Below are positions 1-49,619 of a stretch of DNA of 64,000 nt, in pieces. The notes below the pieces were generated by a model. It saw only the letters and a program-made list of their open reading frames with translations, did not search any database and was not told the origin of the DNA. Positions within the stretch are counted from its first letter, which is position 1, and every line of letters starts with the position of its first letter. The DNA lies in assembly GCA_965285935.1 (NCBI GenBank), contig OZ260666.1, positions 21,762,001 through 21,826,000 on the forward strand. Direction: 5' to 3'. This DNA is from Ophelia neglecta (Eukaryota). A program made the position numbers and the translations under genes.

Positions 1-436
1 GACATTATAGTTTTCCTGCCCGACGGGGCAAGTGAACACATCCCTATATTTTTTTATTCGTTGCTTTAAAAAAAATAGTACAGCAGCGTTGCTGAATATT
101 CTCAAGCAAGTGAAAATAAATTGTCGTATTTATGATATTAAAAAATACATAGTAAACACATTGGCCTATATAGGTGATTAGGCCCTGAAGGGTCATGGTC
201 TTACAGTGGTCATATACTGTACAAATTCCCTAGCCAAATCCACTGTTTATTATGGTCATTATGGTTACTGTATTTTCAATGACTTTGCTAGAAAAGAAAA
301 GAGTTTTTACCAATATAATACTGTCTTTTGAAATGACAGAAAAAAGACGGGCAAGTAGATTTTTCTTGGGGCAGGTAGAAAATTCGGTCAACTGCACTAC
401 TGGGGCAGGCAAAAAATAAAAATTATGTCAGGCCCT
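1..436. mobile_element. Non-autonomous hAT-like MITE, left end cut by window edge
   Basis: Right end ...AATTATGTCAGGCCCTG (reverse complement CAGGGCCTGACATAATT) matches the window start GACATTAT. Subterminal CTGCCC/GGGCAG motifs occur at both ends. TSD cannot be checked. Confidence 0.5.
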
Positions 437-652
437 GGGGTGAAGATTAGCAATACAGCCATATTTTGACTATTGATTTATGTCATGGGCTTTTGCTTTA
501 AAACTAATATTAAACAAGTCTGATATATATATATAAAACTACTAGTGCATCCTGTCTTTTAAAGGGTGATTTTTTTACTATTCATTAGTGTGTATATTGT
601 AAAACCACTCGGATGATTTTAGTGTGCAGGCGCAGTGGTGCGTGGTCTAAGG

Positions 653-5885: not shown

Positions 5886-8800
5886 TTAAACAACCGTTCT
5901 ATGTTCTAAATAATCGACAATGACCTCTGCAAAACGCTGTACTGCAGGCCTTTCTGCGTTAAAATTGAAAAAAGGAATCGTTTCAAACTCATTAAGAATG
6001 ATATGATTGCCTTCGAACATATCTACCCGCGCAAACAGCAGGTCTTTTTGAAGTAAATGTTCAGTTACTTCTAACACTCGCAATGCGGCTGAAATAACTT
6101 CTTTCTTCGGCATTATTTGGTGAATGTGTAAACCCTTAGATATATCTTGGGCCTCTTTAGGAATTTTAATGAATGCATGACTAAACTTATGTCTGATAAA
6201 TATGCAACATATTTCTCCAGTTATTTCCACGGCTTCAATATACTCCTGGACAAATGTATCTCCCCTTCTTAAGAGGTCTTCAAAATGCTTCTGAGCCCCT
6301 GCTCGATCTTCTCCTCGGGCTATTCGCTTTACGCCGAAACTGTCGCATCCTTTCACTGGTTTTATAATGGCTTTCTTCCATTGTTTCTCTTCTAATATAT
6401 CAGCAAAATGAGGAAAATCCTTATTTCTTTTTGTGTACAGCATGGTACTAGGAATCCTGATTCCGTGGCACTGTAACTGAATGAGATAGTGCTTATCCAA
6501 ATTCCACTTGAGCATAAAGGGGGTGGGCAATAAATTGACCTTCGAATTTTCCAGTTTCAACAACCATTTGAAAAACTCGCTAAAATGCTTAACGTAATCC
6601 CAAACTCCTAGAACCAGAACTAGGTCGTAATCATTCCATTGCACCGTTAAATCCTGCCAATCAGCGCTATCAAGAATATGGTCGAGTTGATTAAACTTTT
6701 CTGCAAGCTGCTGAAAGTCGGAGTTGGCTCTCTTGTCTGCGAACGTTAATTTGTCGTAAACGTAGCAGCATTTCCAGATCTGAAAAGATTTAATACAGCT
6801 AAATTTTTCATAATTGTGTTCGATTTAGGCAAGTTAACCGCAAAAGGTATACAAATAATCATCTTCCCATAACCAAATATTTAATCAGCTAATGATACAA
6901 AATTCTGCTAACGATTCTCAAAAGAACTTGTTCTAAAGCTCCTTTTACTCTAAAATATTTTTTTTTTAATGTTGCTTATATTTTATTCTAGTAATTCTGT
7001 ACATTGTGCTTATTGTTAAAGTCACGTGCAGGCGCATATTTCATCTATACTGTTGTAGGATGACATTAATAATTATTAATTACCTAAAAGATATCCTACT
7101 GAGCTGTTTCTTTAAACAGTAGCATTAAATAAGATTGTGTAGCCTTTCAGTTAATAGAGATAATAAAAATACTGTGGCTGGATGCACGCTGTTGAGGGAT
7201 TTTAAAACTCGTATAATTCGGGCTGCGTTTAAAGCTGGATAATGACTGGAAACAACCTGGTAGGTCACATTATGCAATCTTCCAGCCACATTTGCTTATC
7301 AACCTGAAATCAGCTCAAAACTAACTTTGCCTATAAAAAACATGTAGTGCTATTCTGTTTTGCATAGGGCCATGAATTATATTGTATTTGGCTTTAAAGA
7401 GGCCAAGTCTAGTTTATCTTGTATAGTAAATCCTGTTTTATAGGTCAGATAAATATTTATTCTGTTTTTTTATGGAATAAATTATCTTGTTTTCGGACTT
7501 GAATGTCGGTGTACCCATTTATCAAACTCCTTCCTCCAAGGTATACACAGGGCACAATGTACTTAGTAAAGTTAGATCATTATAGTATGAATGCATTGCA
7601 AATCTTACTGTTTATATGTTAGAGTGACAGTTATATGTTAGTATGATTGAAGGTGTTATTTAGTATGTTACCTATGAATGAAACTGGCCAGTTATGAATA
7701 TATGAATATTAGGTTATAAATGTGGATTAGAATAAATGTTGAAAAATGCAGTGTAAATGTGAACTTAGTAAATCTGTTTATGTGATTGTGTATAATGGAC
7801 GATTATGAATGCAAGTTATATGTATGTGACAAGTCATAATATTAATATATTTTCCTATAGTGTGTTTCAAATTGTTTCAGGTGTTTATGAAATCCGGTGT
7901 TTAGAATTAGGCCAAATAAAGAATCACAATTTTCTCACCTAACTCACCCCATTAATACGGAAAACCTCTGGTTAAAAGAACACCATCAAAACTATTAAAA
8001 AGTCAACATAACCATGAAGAATAGGTCAATCTGAAATTCAAGATACCAATATCATCCTTACTTATATGATTTCACTCTAATACTGGCCAATACACTTGAT
8101 GTATTAATCACAAAAAGGCCGCTATGAATAATTCTGTACCATCTGAAATTTTCACTATCGACATTTAGTCAATTTTCGTCCAATCATCTAGAATTATACG
8201 AACTTGCTGAAGAAATGTGGCATAGGTATCAAAATATTACAATATATAAGTCAAGATAGTGTATAGGGAAACGATGTTTTTTATTGATTTTTGTGTGTGT
8301 CAAGTAGGTGCTGTAAAATAAAGGTTAAAGTGACCTGATTCATACAAAGCTGAGAATCGCATAGGAATAATGCAAGCATTTTTGCATAGGCTGTCATTAG
8401 GAACACATGGAGCGAAGATTGGGGTAGTGGGACAATGTGGTGTCCTGGGTAAAGAGACGAGAGAATTCTTCCCTGATACACAGAACACCACATACTCACA
8501 ACTACCCTATTAATATGCTTTGATCTTGAAATCGCAACCTTTGATTTATATTTTAGTTGTTTATGAAAGTATTAACAAGTTAAGAGTTATACCAAGACAT
8601 TATGGTACTGATATGAATTATTATAAATAAAATGATATTCGTGTACTTTTGTGTACATGTATTTGTATTTCTTTCAATGTACGATTCATTGTATTGGCCC
8701 CCACAGGGGAAAACTACAATATTTATATGTCTTGAACCTATGTTAATAGACAACATTTATAATAACACAAAGCCAGTGTTGAGGATTCGTTCATAACCAT

Positions 8801-9344
8801 AAATCTAAAGAGTTATGGTAACTAATTGCTAGATTATGTCGAGGAGGGCCATGATAAAATTGCCCTTTGGTACGGTAGGGGGTCAAACTTAAAGGCTTTA
8901 AAAGAGGGGGAGGGTACTGTTGTCAGTAGAGTAGCAGGCTGTATATCTTTTCTCTAAAATTCCAATTACGGGAATAATATGGACCCAGATATAGAGATAT
9001 TTTCCCTAAACCAAGATACATTCCGTCTCAGCTTCTTTAATATGTAGGCCTGCCAAAACACTCAATTTTCATAGATGTGGGCTAGACGAAATAATCATGC
9101 GTCTGATTAAATTGCAACCATTATCTTGTTCACAAAAGCGATCAGAATGTGATTTCCAAGCCTGAGCCAAGATGACATGTTTTAACTTGTGTAACAACCG
9201 ACTAAAGCGCCCTATTCAAGCTTAGGAAATCACATTTTTATCAACCGGTATACCCGCGGCTCCGTTTTGCTATATAAGACTTCCTCCAATTTGAAAAATA
9301 ACCCACTTTAACTGTAAACTAAATTAAATACTCACCTTTGCCAT
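5886..9344 (-). CDS. ATP-grasp fold ligase, bacterial RimK/glutathione-synthetase-like (DcsG-like) family, ~300 aa
   Basis: Exon1 9344-9336 (ATG GCA AAG|gtgagt); exon2 6779-5886 (tcttttcag|ATC TGG...TAA), phase 0, open throughout. Motifs: DWQDLTVQWNDYDLVLVLGVWDY, N..(P)..KWNLDKHYL.QL...GIRIPST, AIIKPVKG, FVQEYI..V..GE, FSHA..K.P, LFARVD, LNEFE. Confidence 0.85.
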
Positions 9345-10044
9345 GATTGAATGAACTTGCGTGAAGACTCCGAGACGTATATACTAACTTGACTGAACGC
9401 CGTGTATCCTTTTATGCGTCTAATATTAGGGAAAGCTGACCCGAAGCTGCTAATCGAGCAAACGTTCTGGTAAAGTACTATACTGCAATACTTTTTGAAC
9501 TGAAAACTACAAGCTGATAAAATGGTTGGTACATTGAACTATCGCCAAGGTACAGTTTGGAAAGTTTTGGATAAATTTGAGGCCAAAGCATTATAGTCGG
9601 AAAGAAAATTCAAACCATTCCCTCGTTTACAATTTGGCATACAGTGGCAACATAATATGCCTTGTTCCTCTAACACCTTATTTATACTTTTGCGGAGATT
9701 TTCTTGAGGTAGTTTTATTAAAAGATCTTAAAAAACTGGCGGTTTCCCAAAGACTTACCGCCCACGTTATGGCCATCTAAAATAAAGCAAAACCCAATTG
9801 GTTGTTTAATTATAGTCTTATAATTTTAAAGCTTTCCAAATATGACACAAAATGTTGCATTAATTTATGTTATGAATAATTGACACATCGTTTTGCCAGG
9901 GTAGTCTTAATTGATAATCGGACAGCAGTTCACTTGTTTTCGGGATTTTCATGCAGCTCGTCGAAATAAAAATTAACTACAATTCCCCTCAAAATCTTAT
10001 ACCGTACGTCACAAAATTCATTTAGGCATTGTAGCAATTTAAAT

Positions 10045-13402: not shown

Positions 13403-15599
13403 CTACGGATTCGTGTTTTCTTCTGAGTTCAGCGGGACGCAGACCATGTCGGCGACGTCAGCTCTCTGAAACCATTCGGTCCACGCCCCGTCATAGAGTG
13501 GAATGTCACGGTGACCAAGGAGGTACGCGCCAACCAGCAGGAAGCACGCGGTCAGACCTGGGTGTAAGAGAATGTATGGATACATGTATAAGAGAAACAT
13601 TTTAGGAATATAACTACTTTGTAGTAGTACTCATGATGTGAGACTCATTGTTTGAAATTTTCTTTAAAATTATTATTGAACATGATATGTATATTAATGT
13701 TTCTTATTCTTATAATATGTCAACAGCAAAGAATGTGGTACATAAATACATCATTTTGAATGTTTTTTGCTGCATTTCATTCGTCGGTCACATTGAATTA
13801 TGCAAATTAAGCTATTGTTCAAATTTTGGGAAGTTTTTTCCTTTAAAATCCTTGACTGTTTTAAGGCCTACCCCCTTAATAGGGGGCGAGTACCACTGAT
13901 TGTAGATATAATTAACAGCGGGGACCCTACTTGGTCCTTCTTTGCTAAAAAAAAGTCCCATGTGCATTAAAAACATCTATTGTCACGATTTACATGAAAT
14001 TCTGGACCAGAAATGCAAGTCAAACATTTAGGTCATGTTTGCGAAACAAGTGCCCTGGATCTTGGACTGGTTGTTACGATAATGTCATGGTTTATTAAAT
14101 CTTGAAAACCGGCAAGTGGCATGGTTTATGAAAATCTGAATGATTGATAAGCAATATAGATATGACATTTCTTGCTAAACCATGGCAAAGAGTCAACTAA
14201 TTCCGTGCTTCTAGGACAGATCCTGACATTTTGCGGCAGAGTTACGAGTGACTGTAGCCTCACCTGTACCACAGCTGAAAACTAGGTCTTGTTTCAAGTC
14301 AATGGCTGCTGTTTGAAAGATGTCTTGAATCTCCTTTGGCGATCTGAAGGTCTTGGTCTGAGTGTTCATGAACTGGGTAAAGGGCAGGCTGACGGCGTCG
14401 GGAATGTGTCCTGGTTTAATATCTTAGGACAGGAAACAAATAAGAAACAGGTGAATATTATCCTTCCGCCATACAACTATACAGGTGTGTGGAGATGCTT
14501 GGAGGTGTACACGTGATAAGAGAACAAAGATGACAGTGTATCTTCTTCCCTTCGTAGCAGAGGACACAGCTTCGTTCTCTTCGCCTGTAGCATGCGGAGA
14601 AACTATGCGATAAGCATTAGCCTCTGCTGCGAAGGGTATGTATCTACCAGTGCTCAATAAACATGTTTCAAATCATTAGGATCAATATATCGTAATTATA
14701 TTGAATAGCCTTATTTACGTTCACATGTCTATTCAATTCCAAATTTCTGGTTTTATTTGTAATCAAACTATTAAGGAATTATAATGAAGTTGTTATCATA
14801 ATCAAATTGCCCATATTTCAAAATGTTTTGTATCTTCGATAAAGAAGGTAAACTATTTCAAATAAAACTATTGATATTTAAAGTCTGACAAACGTGTTAA
14901 CTTAATACATTACATGTTACCTGGTAGTGGTTCCGGTCCCGTGCCGTTAAATCTAGGAGCCGGCCTTCCATCAACGTACACAAAGGTATTGTCTGTCAAA
15001 TTAGACACCACGTCGTAGAAATATCTGACCAGACTCTTCCGAAATTCACCCTGATAATCCACCTTTGAGACTTCTGGAACCTCCGATGACACCTCCCCGT
15101 CTGTCTCTAGCCATTTTGGCAGTCCTCCGTCGAGGATGGACAATTTGGTGTGTCCGAAAACCCGAAAGATGTACCAAGCGCGTGGAGCGGAAAACATCCC
15201 TATCTTGTCGTGGTTGTCGTAAAGGATCACGTGAGTGTCACGTGAGATGCCCAATGCCCCGACGTATTTACAGAATTGCTCGACAGGTGGCAGGATTTGA
15301 TCTCCATATTTGGCTGTTTTGTCTTTGACCTCATTAAGGTCAAAGAAAACCGCCCCGGGAATGTGCTTGTCTTTGTATTCCTCCGCTGCGTCTCTTTTGG
15401 TCATAGGCATGTGCCAGGAAGCGTCCACGACCCGGATGTCCTCTCCTGGTGACCCCACGTGTTGTTTCAGCCAATCAGGGTCTACTAAAGTCGGCACGCC
15501 AGGATCGCCTTCCCGTGGGATGGCGTCTTCCGGTTCCAGGGGTTGGCGTTTCCCTCCTTGGACATCGGCCTGTCTCTGTCGCCTGTACTCACTATACAT
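13403..15599 (-). CDS. Two-domain rhodanese: 3-mercaptopyruvate/thiosulfate sulfurtransferase (MPST/TST-like), ~330 aa
   Basis: Exons 15599-14921, 14422-14264, 13557-13403 (GT-AG, total 993 nt, in frame). Motifs: VDASW.MP, HIPGAVFFDL, SAPRAW, LDGGLPKW, DGRP..RF.GT.PEP, GHIP.A, active loop SCGTGLTAC, YDGAWTEW. A likely acceptor just upstream of the ATG implies further 5' exon(s). Confidence 0.93.
14548..14637. mobile_element. ~90-bp palindromic mini-element (second copy at 57721-57807)
   Basis: TIR CCCTTCGTAGCAGAG / CTCTGCT(G/A)CGAAGGG; the same core is present at both loci. Confidence 0.65.
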
Positions 15600-19560: not shown

Positions 19561-21795
19561 GCATAGAATCAGTCAATATTTATTTAGTTTTAAATCATAA
19601 GTCATCAGGACTTCTTTTATCTTACAAAGAGCAGGATACTAATTAATTAAGGGCAGGCAAGCAGGGTTTGCCCCTTAATATCGCTCGCCGAAAGTACAAT
19701 TTGTACTATGAAATGTAGTAATCACCCTTTTTAGCAAGTTTACTGTAAGGCTTCTACGGGGCTCCTTTCACGGCACACGCTCGAAACAACACCTGGAACA
19801 AAAATCTCAAAAGGAGGCGGATCTGTGAACCCCCCATCCCCCACTCCTCCCTCCGTTCTGCGAGGTGTGCATCTGTGTGACCCCCTTGGGTGAGAGGGTG
19901 ACCCCCGTTTACACTCTATAGGTCTGGGGTGACTCCCCCCCCCCCCCCTCCTCGGGTGACCCCCGTGTACACACTATAGATCTACCTGTACTGTTCTAAC
20001 CACAAACAAGTCAATGAAACATAGTCTCCGGTAAAACACACATGGCTAAAAAATATATAATTATGTTTACTGGCAAATGGCCATGGTCGTGCCAGGCAAT
20101 ATGCAATAACAGCTACAAATAAGGTAGAGTGTATAGTGTAGCTCCAATATGGATCGCAATATAAATGGTAATATGTGGGTATGTGCCCTTGGAGGAACGT
20201 AGTTTGGTGTACCTCTAATCACGATTAACTCTTAGTTAAAGGCTTTGTAGACCTAGATTTAGGTTGCTATGTGGTTTTAGTGACATAATGTTGTGGATCA
20301 CGACAGGAACCCAATAGTTGAGATCGATTGCATATAAAATATCACTGGGGACCTAGAAGGGGGAGGGGGTTACCTTGCCAGAATGTCTCCTTGGATGTCA
20401 GGACCCACTCAAGTGCCAGGTTATACATGTACTCCAAGGTAATGATAGCCAAGTGGCTCTAGATATTGTTCGTCAGGGGGACCCGCTCGGCGGCTGACAC
20501 CAGCCTTGCACATAGTTATATTACATTCTTAATGTTAGCTTAAGGTCTACCAACTAAGACTATAGCCCGGCCTGGCTTCGCTTAATATCATTTTACAAAA
20601 TTGATGAGATTGGCTGATATGTGTAAAGTTTACGCTCCGTAGCGTAGTCTGATCGGTGCCGATAGGAAAGCATAGCATGCCAACCAGGAAGTCAACCATG
20701 TGCGAAAAATTAAAAACCCTTAAAATCCCGAATAACATCTGCGAAATGGGCAATGAAGTGTTCCCAATCAGTGCTTAGCGTTTGTTAAATACGATCAGCG
20801 ATACTGTGAAATTAATGTTTCAAACTTAGACAGTGAAAAAATTGACTAATATTTACTTTGAAGTCGTCCCCTTCGAAATTGCAGCGGCCATATTGAGAAA
20901 TGAATTAACGTATTTTAACACGAGAATTGCTGCATGAGTATGATATTCATTACCGTAATTTTGCGTGTTTGAGAAAAAAGTGCTTAAACAATCTTCTAGT
21001 ATAACAATCTTATATAAACTGACGTGTGTTTATTCAAGCAGTTGTGGTTTAGTTTTCAGACAATTTCTAATTACATTTTTGAGGCTTGATGGACTGAAGA
21101 AATTTTCACTACCATAGTTTATAATACATGTGCATACTATGATTTGTGTGATTTGCATGTCTTTGGAGATGAATTCCATTTTGTATTTGAATGTACCAAC
21201 AACACAATTGTAGAATTAATGCAAAAGCTGATCCCTAGGTATTATAGGACTAATTTTTATATGTTGAAACTTGAGCAGCTATTTTAAGACGAACGACACA
21301 GTAAAAAACTGGCAATATTTATTAAGCGATGTAAGGTAGTAAACTTTTCAAGTGGAACATAATGATAATGTAAATTGATGTGCAGTATCAAATGTAAAAA
21401 TTAATATTGAATTGTATGTATATTAAATTATATGGTTGTACTCCATGCTCCAGGTGGAGCTTTGAGGCTAATAAACTGTAAACTGTAAACTATTATATTC
21501 ATCATAGTAACCTACCCCAGCAAATTAGTCCATGATATCATTCCTGAGATTTTACCAGTCTGAACCTTGAAACCAACAAATATTGTTCATGGCATGTCTT
21601 TACATCATTTTTCTATAGCAACTTTGTGTCATGCTATCTACTCGACGTGACTGACTGCTGTTCAGTGTGAAGCGTGTATTAAAATCTGAGTTAAACTCGG
21701 ATTGTGAATGCTATTCAGCATCACTGTGCATCTTCCTTGTCCAAATCAAAGCAAATAATATGTATCGACTGTCTCACCGTATAGGGGATCGCAAT

Positions 21796-22080
21796 TTGTA
21801 CTGTTAAGTGGACTTTTCCTGACTGTTGATTTGGTACTGTTAAATGGACTCTTCCTGACTTTTGATTTGGTACTGTTAAATGGACTCTTCCTGACTTTTG
21901 ATTTGGTACTGTTAAATGGACTCTTCCTGACTGTGGATTTGGTACTGTTAAATGGACTCTTCCTGACTGTTGATTTGGTACTGTTAAATGGACTCTTCCT
22001 GACTTTTGATTTGGTACTGTTAAATGGACTCTTCCTGACTGTGGATTTGGTACTGTTAAATGGACTCTTCCTGACTGTTG
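21796..22080. repeat. 39-bp minisatellite (~7.3 units)
   Basis: Unit GATTTGGTACTGTTAAATGGACTCTTCCTGACT(G/T)(T/G)N. Confidence 0.92.
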
Positions 22081-25000
22081 CTTTGGCCTTGTGTGTCGAG
22101 AATCGTCTCCCGTTTTGTAGAAGCATTATACTTAACAGATAGGGAAAATTGCAGCAATGGTCAAAGTACCAAATGAATGGTAAACGATGTAATATTCAGA
22201 AGGAACGCTTCGTTTTCTAATGTAAAAATTGTCAACTAAACAAGCATAGGAAATTTTGGGGCCATTTATCTAATAAGGAAAAACATCGGTCACTCAGACT
22301 TGAAACACATGACATGCATACAATTTTTAAACACAGATACACATTCCTAATCATTTCAAAATAGTTTACGACATACTAGCATGGTTTATTATTCAGTTAA
22401 ATATGTCGCTCTTTATATGCAGAAAAGCAACAATCTAGAAAAATCTTGTAATTTCGTAAACTACATATATGCAAAGCTACAAATCATAACACTTGAAGAC
22501 TTATGCTAACTAGCAAATGATTTGAAGGCATCGGCAATTAGCTAGATCTACACGGTGGAACTTTTCTGTTCTGTTTGCAACGTAAGTTGGATTTATCCAC
22601 TTTATTGTCATGTAAATATTGATGTAGGAATGAATATTACGAAACCGCCTAAGGGAACGGTAAGGAATGGGCGGGCTGATGTACATGTGGAAGGGAGTGG
22701 GCGAAATAACAAAACCATCAGATGGGGGGATTGAGGAGCTTCCGAGGGGGGATTGACCTCTTGTTTTCAAATATCCATGAAAGGGGAGAGGAGGGATGGG
22801 GTGGAGTGGGGACATTATGTATACCCTCCGGAGGGTATACATTTAAAAGGTTTCAGTGACTATCAGCGAACCGCATGATACATCAATTATTTGACCAATG
22901 GCATGCCTATAGACCTAAATCTCAAAGATTAACAAGCAGAAATATATACTTTTAACAGTTGTACAGGCCATAAATCTAGGCCTATATAGGCCTACACTAT
23001 CTCCAAGTGCATGAACAACAACGCAGTTTCGATTCCTCCTTGACAACAAGGGTGTCTGGTGACACTTGAGAACGATGTACAAACCAATCGACCGTGGGGG
23101 ATATCGCAAACACGATTCTACCAACAAAGATAAATAACAGAACCGGACAATAGACTGCTACCAGGCTAACATCAGAATAACATGGCGGCCCAGAAACAAC
23201 AGTTAGTTTACCTACGGGCTTTCGCCTGGGCGTTCAATGTGTGCGTTTGAAAAAAGGCCACCAGCTCGTGATAAGGGCTCGGGGTTGAGGGTCAGTTGTA
23301 TCGAATTATATCATCAAATTTAGCCTATCACCGCACCTCTACTGGTATGAAGGATGTACAAAAGTGCCATGTGTACGTATGAAAATCAACATGCAAGTCC
23401 GATTCACTGGTCTCCACTTTGCACCAAGTTCAGCAGTATTAATTGAAAATGAACCTGTGACCAAGGAAACAGAAGCACTTGGTAAAGCTTATAACTGGTC
23501 AATGCGACCAGGGTACAAGGCATCTGTCTTTCAACACTCTCCTACCCTAATTCCTAGACATAAGACAATTGATTGGTTTGTTTAATATCATACTCTCAAC
23601 CATTGTCTCACCTGATCACTTGATTAGTCTGTTAAATATCATATTTGGATGGGCCATATTTAAACAGAGCTACCGCAAGTTAAAAGAAAAACAGACACAT
23701 TTAACCACAATTTTTCCTGTTTGAAAAGGCAAATTTGACTTCTCTATGCATGGCGAGGAAAATATTCCAAGGAAAATATTTCAAAAGCAAAGAAGTCAAA
23801 TTGCCACCAATTCAGATATCCCCAGGGAACAAATACCAATTTACTAGTCTAAGATCCAAATTTTCACTAGATAAAAGTCACATTTTCTCTAGATAAAAAC
23901 ACAAATCTTCCCAAGATAAAAAAAAAATAGAACTGTACTTTTTCCCTTTCATAAAGCAAAATAATTTCTTTGTGAACGAATCACATGCGGAAGAAACAGT
24001 TTCAAATTTATTCGTAGGTATTTCGTATTGAAAGACTATCTACATATTTTATGATGCATATATACATTTACCTACAAAAATGGAAATAATAATGACATGA
24101 CATTTAGGGTCTCTTGTGCTCATCATTTTTCTGATATTAAAATAAATTCATTTGACTGTAGAAAAAAAAGAATCAGGCTTTTTTGGCAGGAAATATCATT
24201 CATTGTATAACTTACAAATGAGAGGCCATATGCAAACATATGTATAGATGGATTTAGAATCCCCATTCATGGACATTCTACATGAATCTAGGAATAATTT
24301 ACATGCAAGTTGATTAGTTCTTATAAACTCCTATCTTCTTCTAAGTTTTGCTTACATTAATTCTTTTTGCTGCCTTAACAAGAATGGTGATAGTTTACAT
24401 AATAATAAAAGGGAATATCTCGTTAAGACTTACCTGTTAAAAGCAGTATCACAGAGCTGCCATAATATGTCGTCTGCTGTCTTTGTCAGACGAACATCTA
24501 CGAGATGACAATCAATACACGTATCTATAGGTACAAAGAGGCTCAGAGGCTAGAGATGGACCTATGAGTTGTCTCCTGGTTAACTCCAGCTGCAGCGAGT
24601 CTCGGCGACACACCCAGCCGCACCTGTGTGTGGGGCGGATACAGAACTGCGCGGGGTCGAGGGAGGGCACTTGAAACGGATACCGAGCGAAGTTTGTCCC
24701 ATTACCAAGGGGATCGGCTATACGAGACCACGTTAAAAAGCCGAAGAGGGATCTGACCCTCAAAGACCACCCCTGTTTTTCATCACCATGCCCGCTGCTC
24801 TCTATGCTCCCGACGTCCTCGGTGAGCGATGTTCAAGGGACTTAGAACGTGAGCGGCTTGCTACTTGAACCAGCGTCGACCGCACTCAGTCACAACGACA
24901 GGCAGAGCACCGAGTCGGCACTGATTCCCTTATAGCTGGAGCATGTTTGTCTGCTAGCACAGGCCAATAATGCCTTATTATGGTGATTAAATCGATACTC

Positions 25001-25587
25001 GAGCATGGGAACTAATAGGCGCATATACGGGGACCTTTATTTCATTACTGGACTGCTAATAAATTGTTTATAGGATGAGGATGCGGCAAGGTGTTTGGTC
25101 GTGATTCAGGATAAACAACGAAATGCGAGTTCTGGTATCACTCTGGGCGACCAAAACACGTTACAGGGTTGTTGGTAATTACATTGTCGGTCAATAGATT
25201 CAGACTAGGGGTGCGAATTGGTAACGTGTGTGTGTGTAGGGGTGGGGGTGGGGGAGGAGGGGCTCAGTACCACACCTTTTCTAGGTCTAGTGGTCTAATC
25301 TAAGTTAAAGATTTTCAAAGAAATAATTTCATACCTAGACCACTGGACCTAGACCTAAACCACTAGAAAACTGTACAAAAATATCCCCAAAAAATATATA
25401 TTAAAGGGCGAGGGCGAGCTCTATGCTCTCAATTAACATCTCGATTAATAATTAAATATTTGATCAACAGTCATCAAAAACCAGCAGATGGATTTGAAAA
25501 ATGCCGGCGTCGACACAGTCGGTACTCTGATATTGCTACTAATATCCCGACAAATTCTTATTACTTGATTCACCGTTTCACGGACAT

Positions 25588-25722
25588 NNNNNNNNNNNNN
25601 NNNNNNNNNNNNNNNNNNNNNNNNNNNNNNNNNNNNNNNNNNNNNNNNNNNNNNNNNNNNNNNNNNNNNNNNNNNNNNNNNNNNNNNNNNNNNNNNNNNN
25701 NNNNNNNNNNNNNNNNNNNNNN
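25588..25722. other. Assembly gap (135 N)
   Basis: Run of N. Confidence 1.
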
Positions 25723-26678
25723 GAGTGGAGTATTCTCTATTATTATTAGGAACTATTAGTTATAAGAATAAGAGTTGTTAATTAATACTTCTAAGACAAG
25801 ATCTTATAATATATGTAAGTATACATTCGCACTGTTTTATATATGTATACCTGGATGTACATAACCATACCGGATAACAATATTAAAACATTGAATAGGA
25901 AGGCGCGCGAAATAACCCTCTAAGCTTATTAAACCGGGCGGCACCTGGACTGGCTAAAGCGGACTGGACAGTTGCAACAATATATTTAAGGCTGCAATAA
26001 TTCTACGTTTAAATCAAAATGAAATATTTCTTTTAAATCCTGCAATTAGCTGTCAATTAAGGAGCAAATAGCCTTTCCTGGTCTAAGAATTCTCACACTG
26101 TTGTATGGCCGGGCCAAGCTACTTGAAGAAAAAAGTAGTAACCTGGTACAGAAGTTCTATCTAACATATCTATCAGATACTTCTAATTTTACTGCATTAC
26201 TACTACTTCGTATCCGAGAGAGGCTCTGAAGGGCTTTTCATCTCCCCGAGGATTCCGAGGCCCGTTGTGCTCGAGCACGCCGAGCGGCGAGCGGTAGGGC
26301 TCCGCTAGTATTGTGAGGTCCCGGGGGTGAGGCAGCCTATGAAAGGGATTCAGCCCACATCCTCAAAACAATATATACAGATACTGTAAGTCATTATATG
26401 CAAGTAGCGTTGTCGTGGACCACAATAGGTAAAAACCAATACATATTTTCTTTAATTTTGTTAGTTATTACAATTTAAATTCATGTGTTGTTATTTGTCT
26501 TGTATGTTTAAGGCAAGGCGTGTCACGTGACAAACTTTTAATCACTCATACTGAACATCGTTTATCAGTCTTCGTTAACCACATGTTAAACGCGATGCAT
26601 CGCGCGGGAAATAAGTTGTCAATAAGAGTTCTGGGCAGACGATCTATAATACAATGTGTCGATCGCACCATTATTATA

Positions 26679-31103: not shown

Positions 31104-34100
31104 ATGCATTGGAAGGTGTTGCTAACGGTTACGCTGGTCTTGTCCTTGTACGTCGTCATTTCCGGGGTGATTTTCCACTTCATCGAGTTCAGTAACGAGG
31201 GTGTCAACAAGGATCGTATAGCAAATGCGACTGCAACATTTCTCGGTAGGACATCTGGTGGCTTACTCTGTCATTGCAAGCATTGTTGAACTGCCGCCGT
31301 TTGGTGTTTTTTTTTTTACATTAGGTTAACTATAGTAAATATTATTTCCTAAAACATCCTTTTGTTTTTTCTTTTAACTAATATCATATATGTAATTCAT
31401 ACTTTTGTTACTACTAACTATTTATAGTAGGCAGTAGCGGTAGTAGTACCTTGTGCTGAAACTGATGCCGAACTGTTATAGCAGATATGACTTATGAGTT
31501 CCGCAAAATATAAAACAATCATAGCTCAGAATTTTAACACATTCATTATGTTTTATTCCAGCTCAGCACCCAAGTGTTGACAAAGATGCCCTCAGGGCGT
31601 ACGCGATTGAGGTGATGGAGGCTTATGACTCCGGGGTGCTGGTCCCGGCTAACCAAACCGAGGCGTCCCACTGGGACATACCTGGCGCCATCTTCTTCGC
31701 CACCACGGTGGTGACCACTATAGGTATAAACCAAACTATTACACAAACATACATACATATACAGTGAAACCTGTCAATTAAGACCACCTAAGGGACTGTA
31801 AAATGTTGGTCTGTTTATGGTGGTGGTCGGCCTAGACAGGTTATTTTTATATTTAAAGTGTAAAGTAGGGTCTCCATATTAGTGGTCTGAATTGACAGGT
31901 GGTCTGAATATAGAAGTGGTCTTAAAGGCAGGTTTCATCGTACATTGACACCTTTGAATTAAGACCACCAAGGATGGTCGGATTTGGAGATGGTCTGTTT
32001 AGACAGGTTATTTAACATAGAAAGTATACCCCACGGTCTTCATATTAGTGGTCTGAATTGACAGGTGGCCTGATTATAGAGGTGGTCTTTAAGGCAGGTT
32101 TCACTGTACAGTGAAACCTGTGAATTAAGACCACCAAAGGGAATGGAAAATGCTGGTCGGATATTGGAGGTGGTCTGTTTAGACAGGTTATTTAACACAA
32201 GAAAGTATACCCCACGATCTTCACATTAGTGGTCTGAATTGACTCTGATTATGGTCTGATTATAGAGGTGGTCTTTAAGACAGGTTTCACTTTAAATATA
32301 CATGTATATGGCAGACAGTTCAGTTTGATGAGCGTACAGTTAGTTTTAATGGTATCTAACACTAATAATTCCTATTCTATTTAAGGGTACGGTCACATTT
32401 CTCCAAAGACGGTCGCCGGTCAAATCTACTGTGTTTTCTTCGCATTGACTGGGATTCCAGTGTGTCTTGCCATGCTCAGCGGGATAGGAGAATGTATCAA
32501 TTCATTGAAATCTAAGGTAGATATATCTTCACAGCTAATCCAAATAGTTTATTCATCAGTTTATTCATTCAGGGAGGGGTGGGGGGGGGGGGCAAAAAGT
32601 GGGCCTGGACCCGGGTCTATTTCTGGACCCACGCAAGGTGCTTTCAGAGGGTTGGTTACGGGTACAATCCAGACATATGCCTTGCCAGCCTTGGAAAATT
32701 TTGCCCCCCCCCCCCTTCCTGAAATCCTGGGTCCGCCACTGTTCATGAAACTGCGCTGTTCAAAAGGCACCTATATACTTGAAAGAAGTTTCTGGTGGAA
32801 ATGTTCATACATTTTTCAAAATGTGCTCGGATAGACGGAATTAAGAAAATGCTAACTGCAAAATGGTACATTATGGGGCTTTCCGCGCTGTCCAACTAAA
32901 CTACGGGCCATCAAATGTCGTCTAAAGCACGGTCCCACGATCTCGTTCAGCACGACCTAACAGGTTTTTCTCGCTGACCGATCCGCTATAGCGAAAAGAC
33001 TAATCCATGAAACACCGCGCTCCCAGTGTCCGCCGGACGGCTGCGTCCCATAAAAAATGGCCGCGCTCCCAGCGCCGGTCACAGCTTCAGCATGGCTACC
33101 TGATCCCATAGTTATTAACCCGTTAACCACTTGTTGGATATCGCCCAGAGATTGCAATGGTCACTATAGCAGACGACAATAGAGCTCCACGCGGAGGAAT
33201 CTCCTGTCTGCTCAGAACTATTTAGGCATTCACTACGACTCGCAATTAAATATCGTTATGATATCGTTATAAATGTAGGCTAGGATATATTCTTATGCAT
33301 TTATCTACGGTTACATTTTCAGATCGACAAGTCTGTGAGCAGGGCGTGTAAAGGGAGTAAGAAGAAGGTTAGCTGTTGCCGGAATCTGATAACCACGCTG
33401 CTGGCCATCTCTGTGTTTGTCATGGTGCCCGCGGTCGTTTTCATGGTGTTAGAGGATTGGTCATTCGGCGTCTCATTCTATTACGTCATCATCACACTCA
33501 GCACTGTCGGATTCGGTGACTACGTAGCTGGTAGGTTGTACCCTAGTAATATCTAAAACAGTATTTACATATGTAAATTAGTGTTTAATTTCACCATTTT
33601 TTTTATTCCGGGCAGTAAGAAGTTTTATTTTGTTAAAAGACAGATAGTAATCGGTTAGGTGTGAATCGTATTAAAGGTGAATCAATATAGTTAGGTGTGA
33701 ATCGTGTTAGGTAAAAATTAACACGGTTAATTGTGAATCAGCCCGGTTAGGTGTGATTCGTATAGAGTGTGAATGAATTTAGTTAGCTGAGAATCAACAC
33801 GGTTAGGTGTGAATCAATTTAGTCAGGCGTGAAGCAACACGGTCAGGTGTGAATCTATTTAGTGAGGTGTGAATCAACACGGTTAGGTGTGAATCAATTT
33901 AGTCAGGTGTGAATCATCACGGTTAGGTGTGAATCAATTTAGTCAGGGGTGAATCAACACAGTTGGTGTGAATTGTGTTATGTGGTACTCAACACGGTTC
34001 GTTGTGAATCGTGCTAGGTGTAAATCAACAAGTTTAGGTGTGAATCGTGCTAGATACATGTTAACCAACATGTCGAGGCGTGAATAGGTTAGGTGTGGGT

Positions 34101-45997: not shown

Positions 45998-48900
45998 CTA
46001 CGTACAAATTTTTCCATTTACATGGCAACCCACGGCGCCCTCGGCAGATTCCGTATGATGCTCGTCCATTTCCGTTACTTGCTCATCAGACTCTTTTTCT
46101 GCCTGTAAAATCAACAATTTTAACTTTTTATTTACCATTTATAGACATTTCCATTGTTTATTACTTGACATGTTCTCCGTTTCTGTACAGATTTAATTTC
46201 ATATTATTTATGAATATATCTTGAACGGAACTACTTTATCAATATAATACTACTCGCCGGTAAACTAGCATCTCTGTTATCGACACAAGGATTTATTTTA
46301 GAATTCTTCTGTGCTTTGCAGCTCGCTTTCTCGTCAACTCTTTCGAACTGTTTGTTAAAAGTTTCCTGGATATAAGCAATGAGAATGGCTATCCAAGCGT
46401 GACCAAAGAGAATCCACACGGCCACAAACAGACGATACACCGCTCCTGCTGGCATGGCAGTGTCCTGACCTATATAGTAAAATCCCAACACGTTAAAAGC
46501 GCATAGCAATACCTTGTTCTCGGAGAAAAGAACCCATTTTGTGCCTCATGTACGATCTCTAAAAGACTCCCCTCCCCATCCACCTAACTCCAACACACGA
46601 CATCCATGGACATAGACTGAACCCCACTTAGCAGAGCTTCCTTGCTCCAGCCACGGGTTAGTTTTCGAAAGGCTTCGTAAAGATACCCATCAACAATTGC
46701 GATTGTTCCTTTTTAGTTCGGCTTTTGATTAAAAGCGGAAGCGCGGAAACTTGCGGAGGTAAATCTCGATATAAGAACAGAGCACTAGACCTATTAAACT
46801 TGTCCCTAACCCTTCCCCTAACACTAAAATTAACCCTCAGCCCTAATCCTAGCTTTGCTGACGTTTATTTGCTTCCTGTCACTCTGAAATACGTATGACG
46901 TCCGCATAGCTCCCGCGCGTCCGCGTTTAATCAATAGCCTTTAGTTCAGGATTTGGGCATTGTTATATATTATATGTAATAGTGGAAGACTTAAACCGGG
47001 TGTTTTGAATCCCGCCACTGTGTGTAAATGTACCCCATTTGAGAGGTTTGTAATTATTTTTCTTCTTTGCTATGCACTCACTATTAATTTGATAAACTCA
47101 TAATTGTAAATAATATTTTTCTTTAGCTCCTATTCTGTTCAATTTCTTTAGCTCCTATTCTGTTCAATTCGAATACCAGTAATAAGATAAATTCTTGAAA
47201 TATTTTTTAAAATGTTTCAAATATAATCCCCTGTTATGTACAAAATGTATAAACCCCCGTAGTCTCCAATCTGCGTGCGCCAATCTGACTTGTAAAAACA
47301 GGCTAAGATACCCGTCAGTTAAGACCAAAGCATTCATAAGGTAAATATTATTATATCGTTCTAAAATAACAATGAATTGTCAGTTACATATCTTGATACA
47401 TATGTACCAATGGCTTTTGGCTTAACACAGCTGATATTAGTAAATAATACATAAAGTTCATTTTCACAATATGAGCTTTAATTATCACCTGCAACGTAAT
47501 CTCCAAATCCTATTGTGGTCAGCGTAACAAAACTATAGTAGAGACCTTCACTGTAACTCCAATCTGTCTCCACGAGGTGAAATAGCAGCGATGGTAGAAA
47601 TATAAACAGCAGGAGAGACACTAACAAGGCGAGAGATTTCAGTACGTACTCACATGACTTCGCAGGTTCACATTTCGTTCCTTTGTCGACAAATTTAAAT
47701 ATAATTGTTTTCATTTTTTCTGCCAAATTAGCAGTCGCCACAAGGAATAGAGGAATTCCGATACATGCGAAGAAAACACAGAATACCCTGCCACCTGTGG
47801 TAGAAGGGGATATATTCCCGTAACCTGAAACACAAATGATGGTATTTAACACATCTGAATGTGAGCAAAGTTAGCGCTATTAGATTTCACGCCTAATGCA
47901 GGCACGCCCTATAGCGCTAGTGGATGGTAGCCTAAAAGCGCTTTAATATGGCACCCCTAGGTGGGTCACCCAGGGCAATTCCGTGACCGTGAAGAGCAAA
48001 GGTTCGTTTTTTTTCATGGATTCATCTTCTTGGAGGTCTAAATAATAATTTAGCCCCCGATGCCTATTAAAAAAATGTGGGCGAAATTTTTGAGAGGCCA
48101 AAATTCAAAATGGCTGCCGAAAAATATGAATTTTTATTTTTTTTACATAGATTGTGGCATACTATTTGGGGGTCAATGAATCCAAATCTGGCATTATATT
48201 ATTGTTTTGAATCACTTTTGACCTTCAAAGAGGCAAAAATCCATTATGGCCGCCAAAAGTTATAATTTTAATACTTCATTTTCATGGCGGGATAATAAAT
48301 GGTTTTCACTGTTTTAGGGATCAAAGGAGTAAATTCACAAGTTAGTTAAATGTTTTGAGGTAGGTCTGACCCTCCACTAAAAATTTAAAGGGCTGAAATC
48401 CAAAATAGCCGCCTAAATGATGAGATGGTTTTTGAGGTGTTGGGGGTCAAATGATTCAAATCGTGGATTTATTCGATGTTTTGAACATTTCTGAACCCTA
48501 ATGTAAAGCTCTAAGAATACTCGTCCGATAAATATCATACATATGAAACACAAAATGTTCACAAATCTAATCAAACATATGCTGAATGAACAAAACTAAC
48601 ATTTTATTACCACAGTGTATAGTATGCAAGCCCAACATTTTAGCCAGATCTGTTCATTATGACTTTAGCTGTCGCCATCAGAGTCTGTCGATTCTCCACA
48701 CGCCCTGCTGTCATTGTCATCATCACTAGGTTCTTCTTCAATATGGATTTTGGTCAGTTCCTCAAATAAAAGTTAATGTTCGTATTGTGTGTAACATCCG
48801 GACTTATTTAACCTACCTATGGTGGTGGTCACAGTGGTGGCGAAGAAAATAGAGCTGAATAGATCCCAGGTACTCTGGCTGGTCTGGTTCCCTGATAAAG

Positions 48901-49619
48901 GTACCCCCGCTGTCTGAAGGGCTTTGATCAACGCGTCAAACTCCCCAGCTGTTATATTGTGGTTTGCTGAAAACAAAAGACACTGTGGTAAAGGCCGATA
49001 AGAGTAAGACATCTCCCCCCCCAAAAAAACCCCCACTTTTTTGAATAGGATTATCAGTGCCGGATTTAGGGGGGGGGGGGGGGCGAAAAATTTTGCCAGA
49101 AAGTGGGCCCGGACCAGGGCCTATTTCTGGACCCATGCAAGATGCTTTCAAACAGTTGGTAATGGGGACAACCCAGACATTGCCCTGGTCATCCTTGAAA
49201 ACTTTTGGGCCCCTCTTCCTGAAATCCTGGATCCGCCACTGATTATATACCCTCCCCCTTTCACACCCCACCAACTACGAACACATCCCTGTTCTTGTTT
49301 GCTAAAGCCTTCTTTTCTGAACTAAGGGGGTGGCAAGGGGGGGGGGGAAGGGGCTCTCGTCTGCCGGAAAGAGCAGCCTTAGGTTATTAATCCGTACCTG
49401 ATAGATAATAATCATGTCGCATATTAAACATTTTTTCATATCCTTCATGTAGCCTGGATATCTGACTGGGTACATACCTAGTATCTGTTCCTTGGCTCCG
49501 AACACTGTATTATTAGTCCCCTTCTCGCTACTCGATTCGATAAAGTGGAAAATCGCTCCTCCAATGAACAAATAAACCAAAAATATAATGATGACTAGAA
49601 ATAGAGTTAATCCCTGCAT
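45998..49619 (-). CDS. K2P channel paralog C (TALK/TASK-2-like), ~314 aa
   Basis: Exons 49619-49478, 48966-48817, 47824-47489, 46469-46258 (GC donor), 46102-45998 (945 nt, in frame). P1 TTIG|YGNISP, P2 TTIGFGDYVAG. Confidence 0.88.
46720..46939. mobile_element. Merlin-like MITE, same family as 37782-38001, opposite orientation
   Basis: TIR GGCTTTTGATTAAAAGCGGA / TCCGCGTTTAATCAATAGCC; perfect 8-bp TSD TTTAGTTC. Confidence 0.78.
49055..49241. mobile_element. hAT5-like MITE, 5-bp TSD ATTAT
   Basis: CAGTGCCGGATT...GGATCCGCCACTG flanked by ATTAT. Confidence 0.8.

What the first reader, a model, noticed from the sequence alone, without database searches (positions are those of the whole stretch)
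5886..9344. Bacterial-type ATP-grasp ligase in an animal genome: candidate domesticated horizontal transfer
Seen: an intact ~300-aa protein with 297 codons in a single exon and one intron after codon 3, while every neighbouring gene is split into many exons. Known: the motif set W.D..V.W..YD...(W)DY / N......WN.DK.YL / IIKP / QE(Y/F)I..V...GE / YARVD / E.E is typical of the bacterial RimK-like/DcsG group (DcsG cyclises O-ureido-D-serine in D-cycloserine biosynthesis). It does not resemble standard animal ATP-grasp enzymes (GSS, RIMKL, CARNS1, TTLL, ITPK1). Inference: a horizontally acquired gene that gained a spliceosomal intron and may make an uncharacterised small peptide or cyclic metabolite. 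From memory, the bacterial 'DFRVQ..FGG' and 'IEP.L' loops are altered here (KEAQDISKG; ETIPFF), hinting at a changed substrate.
Basis: partly seen in the sequence, partly recalled or inferred. Interest (0 to 1): 0.8.

Follow-up and report, generated by a model that had tools for sequence, protein, structure and literature searches.

The report
Bacterial-type ATP-grasp enzyme family in animal
This is a real two-exon animal gene for an enzyme of a family otherwise almost entirely bacterial (the D-cycloserine-synthetase-like ATP-grasp ligases); it belongs to a nine-copy family kept under selection, so it is most likely an old, domesticated gene transfer whose product is still unknown.

Summary
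On the minus strand, a 3-codon exon (9344-9336, Met-Ala-Lys, GT donor) and an 891-nt exon (6779-5889, stop 5888-5886) give a 300-aa protein. The same Met-Ala/Ser-Lys micro-exon lies upstream of six of the seven intact paralogues. The protein is a confident ATP-grasp fold (pLDDT 95.9). Its nearest solved structure is DcsG (TM 0.86), but it scores far below the DcsG cut-off (119 vs 360 bits), so it is not a DcsG orthologue.

Among billions of proteins the nearest relatives are at most 36% identical, and every named one is bacterial or archaeal. The exceptions are three genes of the annelid Capitella teleta, one green alga, one slime mould, and a few contigs that look eukaryotic.

The genome holds nine loci on four chromosomes. 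All six intact paralogues examined besides the window gene share the intron site, GC content matches the host, and dN/dS is about 0.2. The transfer is therefore old, not recent.

The ATP, Mg and catalytic residues are kept. Two family-wide arginines and a Gly-Gly loop are lost, which suggests a changed substrate. No RNA data exist, so expression and splicing are not shown. One versus several transfers into animals cannot be resolved (AU p = 0.36).

The parts
9408..9417 (-). TATA-like box GCATAAAAGG, about 65-70 nt upstream of the start codon (candidate core promoter)
   Evidence: Read directly. The same decamer lies about 90 nt upstream of the micro-exon of paralogue L007. Function is inferred, not shown.
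9336..9344 (-). Exon 1 coding part: ATG GCA AAG (Met-Ala-Lys), followed by a consensus donor GTGAGT
   Evidence: A homologous Met-Ala/Ser-Lys micro-exon with a GT donor lies upstream of paralogues L003, L006, L007, L008 and L009.
6780..9335 (-). Phase-0 spliceosomal intron (2556 nt, GT...AG, polypyrimidine tract ..aatcttttcag)
   Evidence: The acceptor sits at the same codon in all intact paralogues, and intron length varies from 305 to 2616 nt. DNA contigs of public runs cross the acceptor unspliced, as expected for genomic DNA.
5889..6779 (-). Exon 2: 297 codons encoding the whole ATP-grasp enzyme (N-terminal, central and C-terminal domains)
   Evidence: Conserved residues: K96, Y98, K140, P141, Q178, E189, H201, K205, R251, D253, E264, E266 and P269.
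5886..5888 (-). Stop codon TAA
5876..5881 (-). AATAAA polyadenylation signal 4 nt after the stop
   Evidence: Present in the window copy and its 99% duplicate. Function is inferred.

Best explanation
The locus is a functional two-exon animal gene for a roughly 300-aa cytosolic ATP-grasp enzyme of the DcsG_N/RimK-like family (Pfam PF27100 in its relatives). The family is overwhelmingly bacterial. An ancestor of this animal most likely acquired a bacterial copy by horizontal transfer. A host 5' exon (promoter, 5'UTR, Met-Ala/Ser-Lys) was then spliced onto the bacterial reading frame exactly at its old start codon. The gene later multiplied to nine loci on four chromosomes, with composition matching the host. 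Inferred mechanism: Mg-ATP binds between the central and C-terminal domains (K96, K140, the Q178-E-Y-I hinge, E189, D253, E264, E266). A substrate carboxylate is phosphorylated to an acyl-phosphate, stabilised by R251. An amine then attacks to form an amide bond, either between two molecules (ligase) or within one (cyclase, as in DcsG). The animal clade has lost two arginines that are near-universal in the relatives (R57 of 'R-S-x-W-D-Y' and the R of 'D-F-R-V-Q') together with the following Gly-Gly loop. The substrate is therefore probably different from that of the bacterial enzymes, and is unknown. Shown: gene structure by comparison, family membership, fold, conservation of the core, purifying selection, patchy distribution. 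Inferred: transfer, timing, catalysis, substrate change, expression.
For: Family and fold:
- NCBIfam DcsG E 1.6e-34; PDB 6jil E 1.4e-20.
- AF2 pLDDT 95.9, pTM 0.92; Foldseek best hit 6jil at TM 0.86, then Ddl, LysX/ArgX, GshB and RimK.

Distribution:
- An exhaustive HMMER search found 4274 representatives, the best at 32-36% identity.
- Profile and word searches name only bacteria and archaea, plus Capitella teleta CAPTEDRAFT_216496, _200641 and _205047, Cymbomonas and Heterostelium.
- The 80 best loci kept (of 577 confirmed) in one-genome-per-species bacterial genomes span at least 8 phyla.
- Nothing above 33% identity was found in JGI metagenomes.

Integration and age:
- The gene lies on a 78-Mb chromosome between rhodanese, K2P-channel and hemopexin genes.
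- Nine loci sit on C5, C7, C9 and C12.
- The phase-0 intron and Met-Ala/Ser-Lys micro-exon are conserved.
- Exon 2 starts at the column of the bacterial Met.
- ORF GC is 0.39-0.45 against a window GC of 0.40.

Selection:
- dN/dS is 0.16-0.23 between old paralogues with dS above 1, and all frames are intact.

Core kept, pocket changed: the column-by-column comparison is.

Tree:
- The own paralogues are monophyletic (100/99).
- Their sister is P0002, from an animal-like contig (98/90), which shares the 5-residue loop deletion.
Against: - No RNA run holds the locus, so transcription and the 9336/6779 junction are not shown.
- No bacterial donor lineage can be named, because deep branches are unresolved.
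- The AU test does not reject a single clade of this family with the Capitella genes (p = 0.355). One old transfer and several transfers are therefore equally open, and a very old eukaryotic origin is not formally excluded.
- The searched collections may withhold this genome and its near relatives, so the true range within its own phylum is unknown.
- This particular copy has Pro in place of the invariant Asn85 and lacks the Glu of the 'I-E-P' loop. It may be a weaker or altered enzyme compared with its paralogues.
Confidence: 0.7

Rival explanations
1. Several independent transfers. The family of this genome (with P0002) and the Capitella genes entered animals separately from different bacteria. 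They do not come from one ancient transfer into a common ancestor.
For: In the careful tree Capitella P0039, P0280 and P0007 group with Chloroflexota-type sequences (96/87), apart from the window clade. Capitella P0082 is closest to Gemmatimonadota-type sequences at about 40% identity. The Capitella genes keep their own bacterial-style start Met and R57, whereas the window clade has the captured 5' exon.
Against: The AU test does not reject holding them together (p = 0.355). The least derived paralogues score slightly higher against P0002 and Capitella P0039 than against any bacterium. A eukaryote-like contig, L113, has an acceptor at the same column and no ATG, which hints at a shared exon structure beyond this species.
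Confidence: 0.4
2. Vertical descent. The family is an ancient eukaryotic gene lost in nearly all lineages and retained in a few (this animal, Capitella, a prasinophyte alga, a dictyostelid).
For: Members exist in three distant eukaryotic groups. Deep nodes are unresolved, so eukaryote monophyly is not strictly rejected.
Against: Cymbomonas and Heterostelium fall in different parts of the tree from the animal sequences and from each other. Each eukaryotic sequence is about as close to bacteria (36-40%) as to other eukaryotes. No named animal other than Capitella appears in three searches of billions of proteins. This reading needs dozens of independent losses.
Confidence: 0.08
3. The window copy is a decaying or non-catalytic duplicate (pseudo-enzyme), even if the family as a whole is functional.
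For: This copy has Pro for the invariant Asn85, has lost the Glu of 'I-E-P', and carries Y249F, L267T and L271F at near-invariant columns, plus a 3-codon deletion relative to its neighbour copy. Its closest paralogues include one with a frameshift (L004) and one lacking 24 residues including W-D-Y (L007). dN/dS against its 99% duplicate is 0.49, based on only 6 changes.
Against: The 297-codon frame is intact in both near-identical copies. All ATP, Mg and catalytic residues are kept. The model is confidently folded. dN/dS against L007 is 0.22. TATA-like and AATAAA signals are in place.
Confidence: 0.2
4. Bacterial contamination or an assembly artefact.
For: Nearly all relatives are bacterial.
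Against: The gene has a spliceosomal intron and lacks a start codon of its own. There are nine loci on four chromosomes of 76-116 Mb among animal genes. GC content matches the host. Short-read contigs of public runs bridge the ORF and its flanks. No bacterium is closer than 36% identity.
Confidence: 0.01

Closest known systems
DcsG, D-cycloserine synthetase of Streptomyces (PDB 6JIL; NCBIfam NF058666)
   Same: It has the same three-domain ATP-grasp architecture and length (about 300 aa). It is the best sequence match in the PDB (E 1.4e-20) and the best structural match (TM 0.86, rmsd 2.6 A). The K/K/Q/E/R/D/E-x-E core is shared.
   Different: Identity is only 24%. The score of 119 bits is far below the 360-bit equivalog cut-off. 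The gene is not in a dcs cluster. It sits in an animal chromosome with an intron. The arginines of the substrate-side loops are replaced. It is therefore a family relative, not a D-cycloserine synthetase.
Uncharacterised bacterial DcsG_N/'RimK-type' ATP-grasp proteins (PF27100), e.g. in Flavobacteriaceae, Gemmatimonadota, Chloroflexota and Acidimicrobiia
   Same: They are the closest sequence relatives (28-36% identity over the full length) with the same length and motif set.
   Different: The bacterial proteins keep R57, 'D-F-R-V-Q...G-G' and 'I-E-P-x-L', which the window clade has lost or changed. The bacterial genes start with their own Met and have no conserved neighbours. Their function is also unknown.
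Capitella teleta CAPTEDRAFT_216496, _200641 and _205047 (uncharacterised)
   Same: They are the only named animal relatives. They belong to the same family, lie in animal scaffolds next to ADAR and SNF-transporter genes, and form a multi-copy family.
   Different: Identity to the window protein is 30-38%. They keep a bacterial-style start Met and R57. They do not group with the window clade in the best tree, although a common clade is not rejected.
RimK, GshB, LysX/ArgX and D-Ala-D-Ala ligases (classical small ATP-grasp ligases)
   Same: They share the fold and the acyl-phosphate chemistry (TM 0.67-0.73).
   Different: Sequence matches are weak, for example TIGR00768 at 27.5 bits against a cut-off of 143. 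They form a different subfamily.
Other ATP-grasp genes of bacterial origin in animals (recalled from memory, not tested here: mycosporine-pathway ATP-grasp of cnidarians, D-Ala-D-Ala ligase of bdelloid rotifers)
   Same: They follow the same evolutionary pattern: a bacterial ATP-grasp enzyme is fixed in an animal genome and acquires introns.
   Different: They belong to different ATP-grasp subfamilies and different host phyla. I found no paper describing a DcsG-like family in animals.

Membership tests
ATP-grasp superfamily | Three-domain ATP-grasp fold | tested here: met
   AF2 model with pLDDT 95.9. All 500 counted Foldseek matches have E <= 0.001, and every listed top hit is an ATP-grasp enzyme, the best at TM 0.86.
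ATP-grasp superfamily | ATP-binding lysines, hinge and Mg-binding acidic triad | tested here: met
   K96, K140 (I-I-K-P), Q178-E-Y-I, E189, R251, D253, E264 and E266 are all kept at columns that are 99-100% conserved in the 106 relatives compared.
DcsG_N / RimK-like ATP-grasp family (Pfam PF27100) | Significant full-length sequence similarity to family members | tested here: met
   NCBIfam DcsG profile E 1.6e-34 over residues 19-290. There are 2389 representatives at E <= 1e-10, and every listed hit carries PF27100. The local Pfam copy gave no PF27100 hit even for P0001, so the model itself could not be run.
DcsG_N / RimK-like ATP-grasp family (Pfam PF27100) | Near-invariant substrate-side residues: R of 'R-S-x-W-D-Y', R of 'D-F-R-V-Q', the G-G loop, and E of 'I-E-P' | tested here: not met
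   R57 is Leu, R213 is Ile, there is a 5-residue loop deletion, and the Glu is deleted in this copy. The first three changes are shared by all own paralogues and P0002.
DcsG proper (D-cycloserine synthetase, NF058666 equivalog) | Score at or above the curated cut-off of 360 bits | tested here: not met
   119.4 bits.
DcsG proper (D-cycloserine synthetase, NF058666 equivalog) | Location in a dcsA-J type biosynthetic cluster; activity on O-ureido-D-serine | not tested
   The neighbours in the window are rhodanese, K2P-channel and hemopexin genes. The other dcs genes were not searched for, and activity needs an assay.
RimK family (TIGR00768) | Score at or above the cut-off of 143.4 bits | tested here: not met
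   27.5 bits.
Domesticated horizontally transferred gene in an animal | Physically part of the host chromosome, with host-type gene structure | tested here: met
   The gene has an intron and a captured 5' micro-exon. Nine loci lie on four chromosomes with animal neighbours, and GC matches the host.
Domesticated horizontally transferred gene in an animal | Nested in prokaryotic diversity and absent from most animals | tested here: inconclusive
   All named relatives are prokaryotic except Capitella, one alga and one dictyostelid.
Domesticated horizontally transferred gene in an animal | Purifying selection | tested here: met
   Nei-Gojobori dN/dS is 0.16-0.23 between paralogues with dS of 1.2 or more, and 0.54 for the youngest informative pair.
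Domesticated horizontally transferred gene in an animal | Transcribed and spliced | not testable with these tools
   No RNA run holds the stretch. The three runs found are DNA-like contigs of one sample with no joints.

The most novel reading that the evidence does not exclude
A clade of animal-encoded DcsG-like ATP-grasp enzymes has a remodelled, arginine-poor substrate pocket. It occurs in this animal, in an unnamed animal-like contig, and perhaps in annelids. It would make a small amide-linked or cyclised metabolite, such as an unusual dipeptide or heterocycle, that is produced by the animal itself and not by its microbes. That would be a new case of animal natural-product biosynthesis born from gene transfer and expanded by duplication.
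Probability: 0.25. Interest if true: 0.8.

Novelty: new member of a known kind. Interest (0 to 1): 0.55.

Why it matters
Well-supported bacterial enzyme genes that are fixed, intron-bearing, multiplied and under selection in animals are still few. Each one can mark a new piece of animal metabolism. This case is clean in three ways. The transferred frame is intact, the host 5' exon joins exactly at the old start codon, and the ATP-handling core is preserved while the substrate-side residues changed in the whole clade.

Only one member of this very large family (DcsG) has a known reaction. An animal branch that can be expressed and assayed would therefore add to knowledge of the family as well as of the host. 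I found no paper describing the family in animals. The Capitella homologues are deposited only as uncharacterised proteins.

Tried and rejected
- **RNA evidence.** The look-up of sequencing runs returned only three DNA-like runs of one sample. Laying them showed continuous genomic contigs and no joints. They say nothing for or against splicing.
- **Word search with the single protein.** It gave one hit only. The profile and exhaustive searches were needed.
- **Bacterial gene neighbourhood as a clue to function.** Among 139 neighbours of the 80 loci no family is conserved. The commonest are oligopeptide ABC ATPases (8), LysE exporters (5) and penicillin amidase (4). I rejected this as a guide to the substrate.
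- **Rhodanese adjacency.** A rhodanese gene sits beside the bacterial homologue in L001 and about 8 kb from the gene in the window. This is a coincidence, since it is not among the 25 most frequent families.
- **Naming a donor phylum.** I rejected this because four trees disagree at depth.
- **DNA search of the first 20 kb against the own genome.** It was meant to size the duplicated segment but was swamped by interspersed repeats.
- **Literature.** Seven of the ten allowed full-text searches (and the failed DOI look-up) found nothing on this family in animals. The DcsG structure paper is not held.
- **Alternative first exon.** ATG..GTAAGT lies 2997 nt upstream and would encode M-A-I-T-W-A. 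I rejected it because no diverged paralogue has a counterpart; only the 99% duplicate L003 does.
- **Species identification.** I could not name the host species with these tools.
- **The joined 300-aa model.** Exon 1 plus exon 2 was never sent to any tool. N stretches were left alone.
Full report
**1. What is in the sequence**

The gene lies on the minus strand. Its parts are:
- ATG GCA AAG at 9344-9336, followed by GTGAGT.
- A 2556-nt intron (9335-6780) that ends in ..aatcttttcag.
- An open frame from 6779 to 5889, with stop TAA at 5888-5886.

Exon 2 holds 297 codons. The frame stays open for 15 more codons upstream but contains no ATG there; the first in-frame Met is residue 89 of exon 2. 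A start exon is therefore needed. A TATA-like GCATAAAAGG lies at 9417-9408, and an AATAAA lies 4 nt after the stop.

I searched exon 2 only, by reference. The joined 300-aa model was never handed to a tool.

**2. Support for the gene model**

No RNA run holds this stretch. The three runs that do hold it are DNA-like contigs of a single sample. They cover exon and intron alike and show no joints. The support is therefore comparative.

The genome (762 Mb; the window is C9:21762001-21826000) has nine matching loci:
- the window gene;
- a 99% copy 2 Mb away on C9 (L003);
- a 92-93% DNA-identical (90% at the protein level) neighbour of that copy with a 1-nt insertion at about codon 50 (L004);
- four copies within 27 kb on C5: L005, L007, L008 and a broken fragment with a TGA;
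- one copy on C7 (L006);
- one copy on C12 (L009).

Every intact copy starts its long exon at the same codon, directly after a pyrimidine tract and AG, with the residues [I/V]-[W/L]-K-C-C and no ATG of its own.

Upstream of six of the seven intact copies, at 305 to 2616 nt, there is a micro-exon ATG-(GCA/TCN)-AAG followed by GT. It encodes Met-Ala/Ser-Lys. These paralogues are only 43-59% identical in protein and are saturated at synonymous sites, so the shared micro-exon is not a copying artefact.

**3. What the protein is**

- NCBIfam's best model is DcsG (E 1.6e-34 over residues 19-290). The score is 119 bits against a cut-off of 360.
- RimK and MptN match weakly.
- The local Pfam copy gives only sub-threshold hits to prokaryotic GSH-S_ATP, Dala_Dala_lig_C and ATP-grasp_3. 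It gives no hit to the families of animal GSS, RIMKL, CARNS1, TTL or ITPK1.
- The only strong PDB sequence match is DcsG 6JIL (E 1.4e-20).
- An AlphaFold model built on 115 sequences is very confident (pLDDT 95.9, pTM 0.92).
- Its best structural matches are 6JIL (TM 0.86), followed by D-Ala-D-Ala ligases, LysX/ArgX, GshB and RimK.

The protein is thus an ATP-grasp enzyme of the DcsG_N/RimK-like family, but it is not a DcsG orthologue.

**4. Conserved and changed residues** (106 relatives, most of them bacterial, against the six own copies)

Kept in all copies: K96, Y98, L99, K140, P141, Q178, G188, E189, H201, R251, D253, E264, E266 and P269; K205 is Gln in L008. By established knowledge of ATP-grasp enzymes these are the ATP-phosphate lysines, the adenine hinge, the arginine that stabilises the acyl-phosphate, and the Mg ligands.

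Changed in the whole own clade, and in its sister P0002:
- R57 of 'R-S-x-W-D-Y' (98% conserved) is Leu (Thr at that alignment column in L007, which lacks this segment).
- T8 is aromatic (Ser in L009 and in P0002).
- S191 is Cys, Gly or Lys.
- R213 of 'D-F-R-V-Q' is Ile or Met, and five residues including the Gly-Gly are missing.

Changed in the window copy alone: Pro in place of the invariant Asn85; Phe in place of Tyr249; Thr267; Phe271. One further change is shared with L007: both lack the Glu of 'I-E-P'.

My inference is that chemistry at the ATP side is retained and the substrate side is remodelled.

**5. Who else has it**

- The exhaustive HMMER search of 1.84 billion representatives found 4274 hits. 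None exceeded 36% identity.
- Word and profile searches of 5.8 billion clusters name only bacteria (many Flavobacteriaceae, Legionella and various MAGs) and a few archaea.
The 80 kept come from Gemmatimonadota, Chloroflexota, Actinomycetota, Bacteroidota, Pseudomonadota, Myxococcota, Planctomycetota and Acidobacteriota.
- JGI metagenomes hold nothing closer than 33%.

The eukaryotic exceptions are:
- Capitella teleta CAPTEDRAFT_216496 (next to an ADAR gene), _200641 and _205047 (next to an SNF transporter);
- Cymbomonas tetramitiformis;
- Heterostelium album;
- unnamed long-read 'metagenome' contigs that look eukaryotic or animal. They have sparse ORFs, sulfotransferase and P4Ha_N exon fragments, and microsatellites. 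They carry P0002, P0005 and P0156/P0004.

I found no paper on this family in animals.

**6. Phylogeny**

- The own paralogues are monophyletic (100/99), with P0002 as sister (98/90). This fits the shared loop deletion.
- Capitella P0039, P0280 and P0007 form a separate clade with Chloroflexota-type sequences (96/87).
- The alga and the dictyostelid fall elsewhere.
- Deep nodes are weak. An AU test does not reject one clade of the own family, P0002 and the Capitella group (delta lnL 10.9, p = 0.355).
- Capitella P0082 is closest to Gemmatimonadota-type proteins at about 40% identity.

A bacterial origin is well supported. The number of transfers into animals and the donor are not resolved.

**7. 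Signs of age and domestication**

- Exon 2 of the own paralogues begins exactly at the alignment column where the bacterial proteins have their start Met. The eukaryote-like contig L113 shows the same pattern: an acceptor, no ATG, same column. A host 5' exon has replaced the bacterial start.
- ORF GC is 0.39-0.45 and GC3 is 0.39-0.47. These equal the window's GC of 0.40 and lie within the range of host exons.
- dN/dS is 0.16-0.23 between old paralogues (for example window against L007: dN 0.27, dS 1.2). It is 0.54 for the young pair L006/L009 and 0.49, on six changes, for the window against L003.
- Decay also occurs: the L004 frameshift, the 24-residue deletion in L007 that removes W-D-Y, and the C5 fragment.

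**8. Likely mechanism**

The most likely mechanism is an ATP-dependent carboxylate-amine ligase or cyclase acting through an acyl-phosphate, on a small substrate that differs from that of the bacterial relatives.

The bacterial neighbourhoods give no usable clue to the substrate. Whether this derived copy is fully active is uncertain; I put the chance of a weakened or non-catalytic copy at about 0.2.

**9. Verdict**

- Novelty: a new, undescribed animal member of a known enzyme family and of a known evolutionary pattern.
- Interest is moderate to good. It would rise sharply if a product were found.

Noticed in passing
G000:C9:23753521-23757411 (L003) and C9:23747021-23755020 (L100): This is a 98.5-99% identical copy of the whole window gene (exon 1, intron, exon 2 and at least 1 kb upstream). 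It lies 2 Mb away on the same chromosome in the opposite orientation. It is either a recent segmental duplication or, less likely, a duplicated haplotype in the assembly.
   Followed up: partly
G000:C9:23737701-23741447 (L004): This copy is 92-93% identical and lies 16 kb upstream of L003. It has a 1-nt insertion in a T run at about codon 50, which causes a frameshift. It also has a 3-nt deletion and 9 extra nt that the window copy lacks. It is probably a pseudogene, unless the homopolymer is an assembly error.
   Followed up: partly
G000:C5:28234168-28261850 (L005, L007, L008 and a fragment): Four family members sit in a 27-kb tandem cluster. One (L007) lacks 24 residues including the W-D-Y motif. 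Another (28234168-28234763) is fragmentary with an in-frame TGA.
   Followed up: partly
window 6765-6779 (-) and all paralogues: The mature N-terminus would read Met-Ala/Ser-Lys-[I/V]-[W/L]-Lys-Cys-Cys. The paired cysteines next to basic residues are specific to this animal clade; bacteria have small hydrophobic residues there. They resemble N-terminal dual-cysteine acylation sites, but they lie in the first beta strand of the model. This is speculative.
   Followed up: no
L094:6001-7245 and L114:5001-7646 (Capitella teleta scaffolds KB310317.1, KB310993.1): The deposited Capitella models carry 37- and 61-residue N-terminal extensions from upstream exons. Both ATP-grasp frames have a bacterial-style Met exactly where the bacterial proteins start (M-N-I-A-F-A-T-Y; M-S-H-L-V-A-L-V), so the extensions may be annotation artefacts.
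   Followed up: partly
L001:4615-5941 and window 14910-15599: A rhodanese gene lies directly upstream of the bacterial homologue P0001, and a rhodanese (MPST/TST-like) exon lies about 8 kb from the gene in the window. Rhodanese is not a recurrent neighbour across the 80 bacterial loci, so this looks like coincidence.
   Followed up: yes
window 1-437, 981-1452, 1923-2338, 14545-14648: Interspersed repeats have dozens of copies at 86-94% identity on many chromosomes. Depth peaks inside the intron at about 7478-7604 and 7859-7985 suggest further repeats there.
   Followed up: no
window 32445-32834, 48936-49325, 56439-56828: A recurring element has ORFs on both strands that share a stretch like G-P-G-P-G-(P/S)-I-S-G-P-T-Q-G-A-F-R-G-L-V-T-G-T-I-Q-T. 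It is probably a family of mobile or repeated DNA.
   Followed up: no
window 21746-22142 and 52764-53279: Two coding-looking tandem repeat arrays: a 12-residue unit (S-T-V-R-K-S-P-F-N-S-T-K) and a 14-residue unit (R-P-Y-R-S-D-H-T-G-Q-T-I-Q-V).
   Followed up: no
window 46231-49619 and 55353-55862: Two tandem two-pore-domain potassium channel genes lie on the minus strand (Ion_trans_2, T-I-G-F-G-D filters). A hemopexin-repeat gene with a Thr/Pro/Arg-rich linker lies at 62919-63434.
   Followed up: partly
window about 25590-25720: A run of N (read as X in an ORF at 25460-25759).
   Followed up: no
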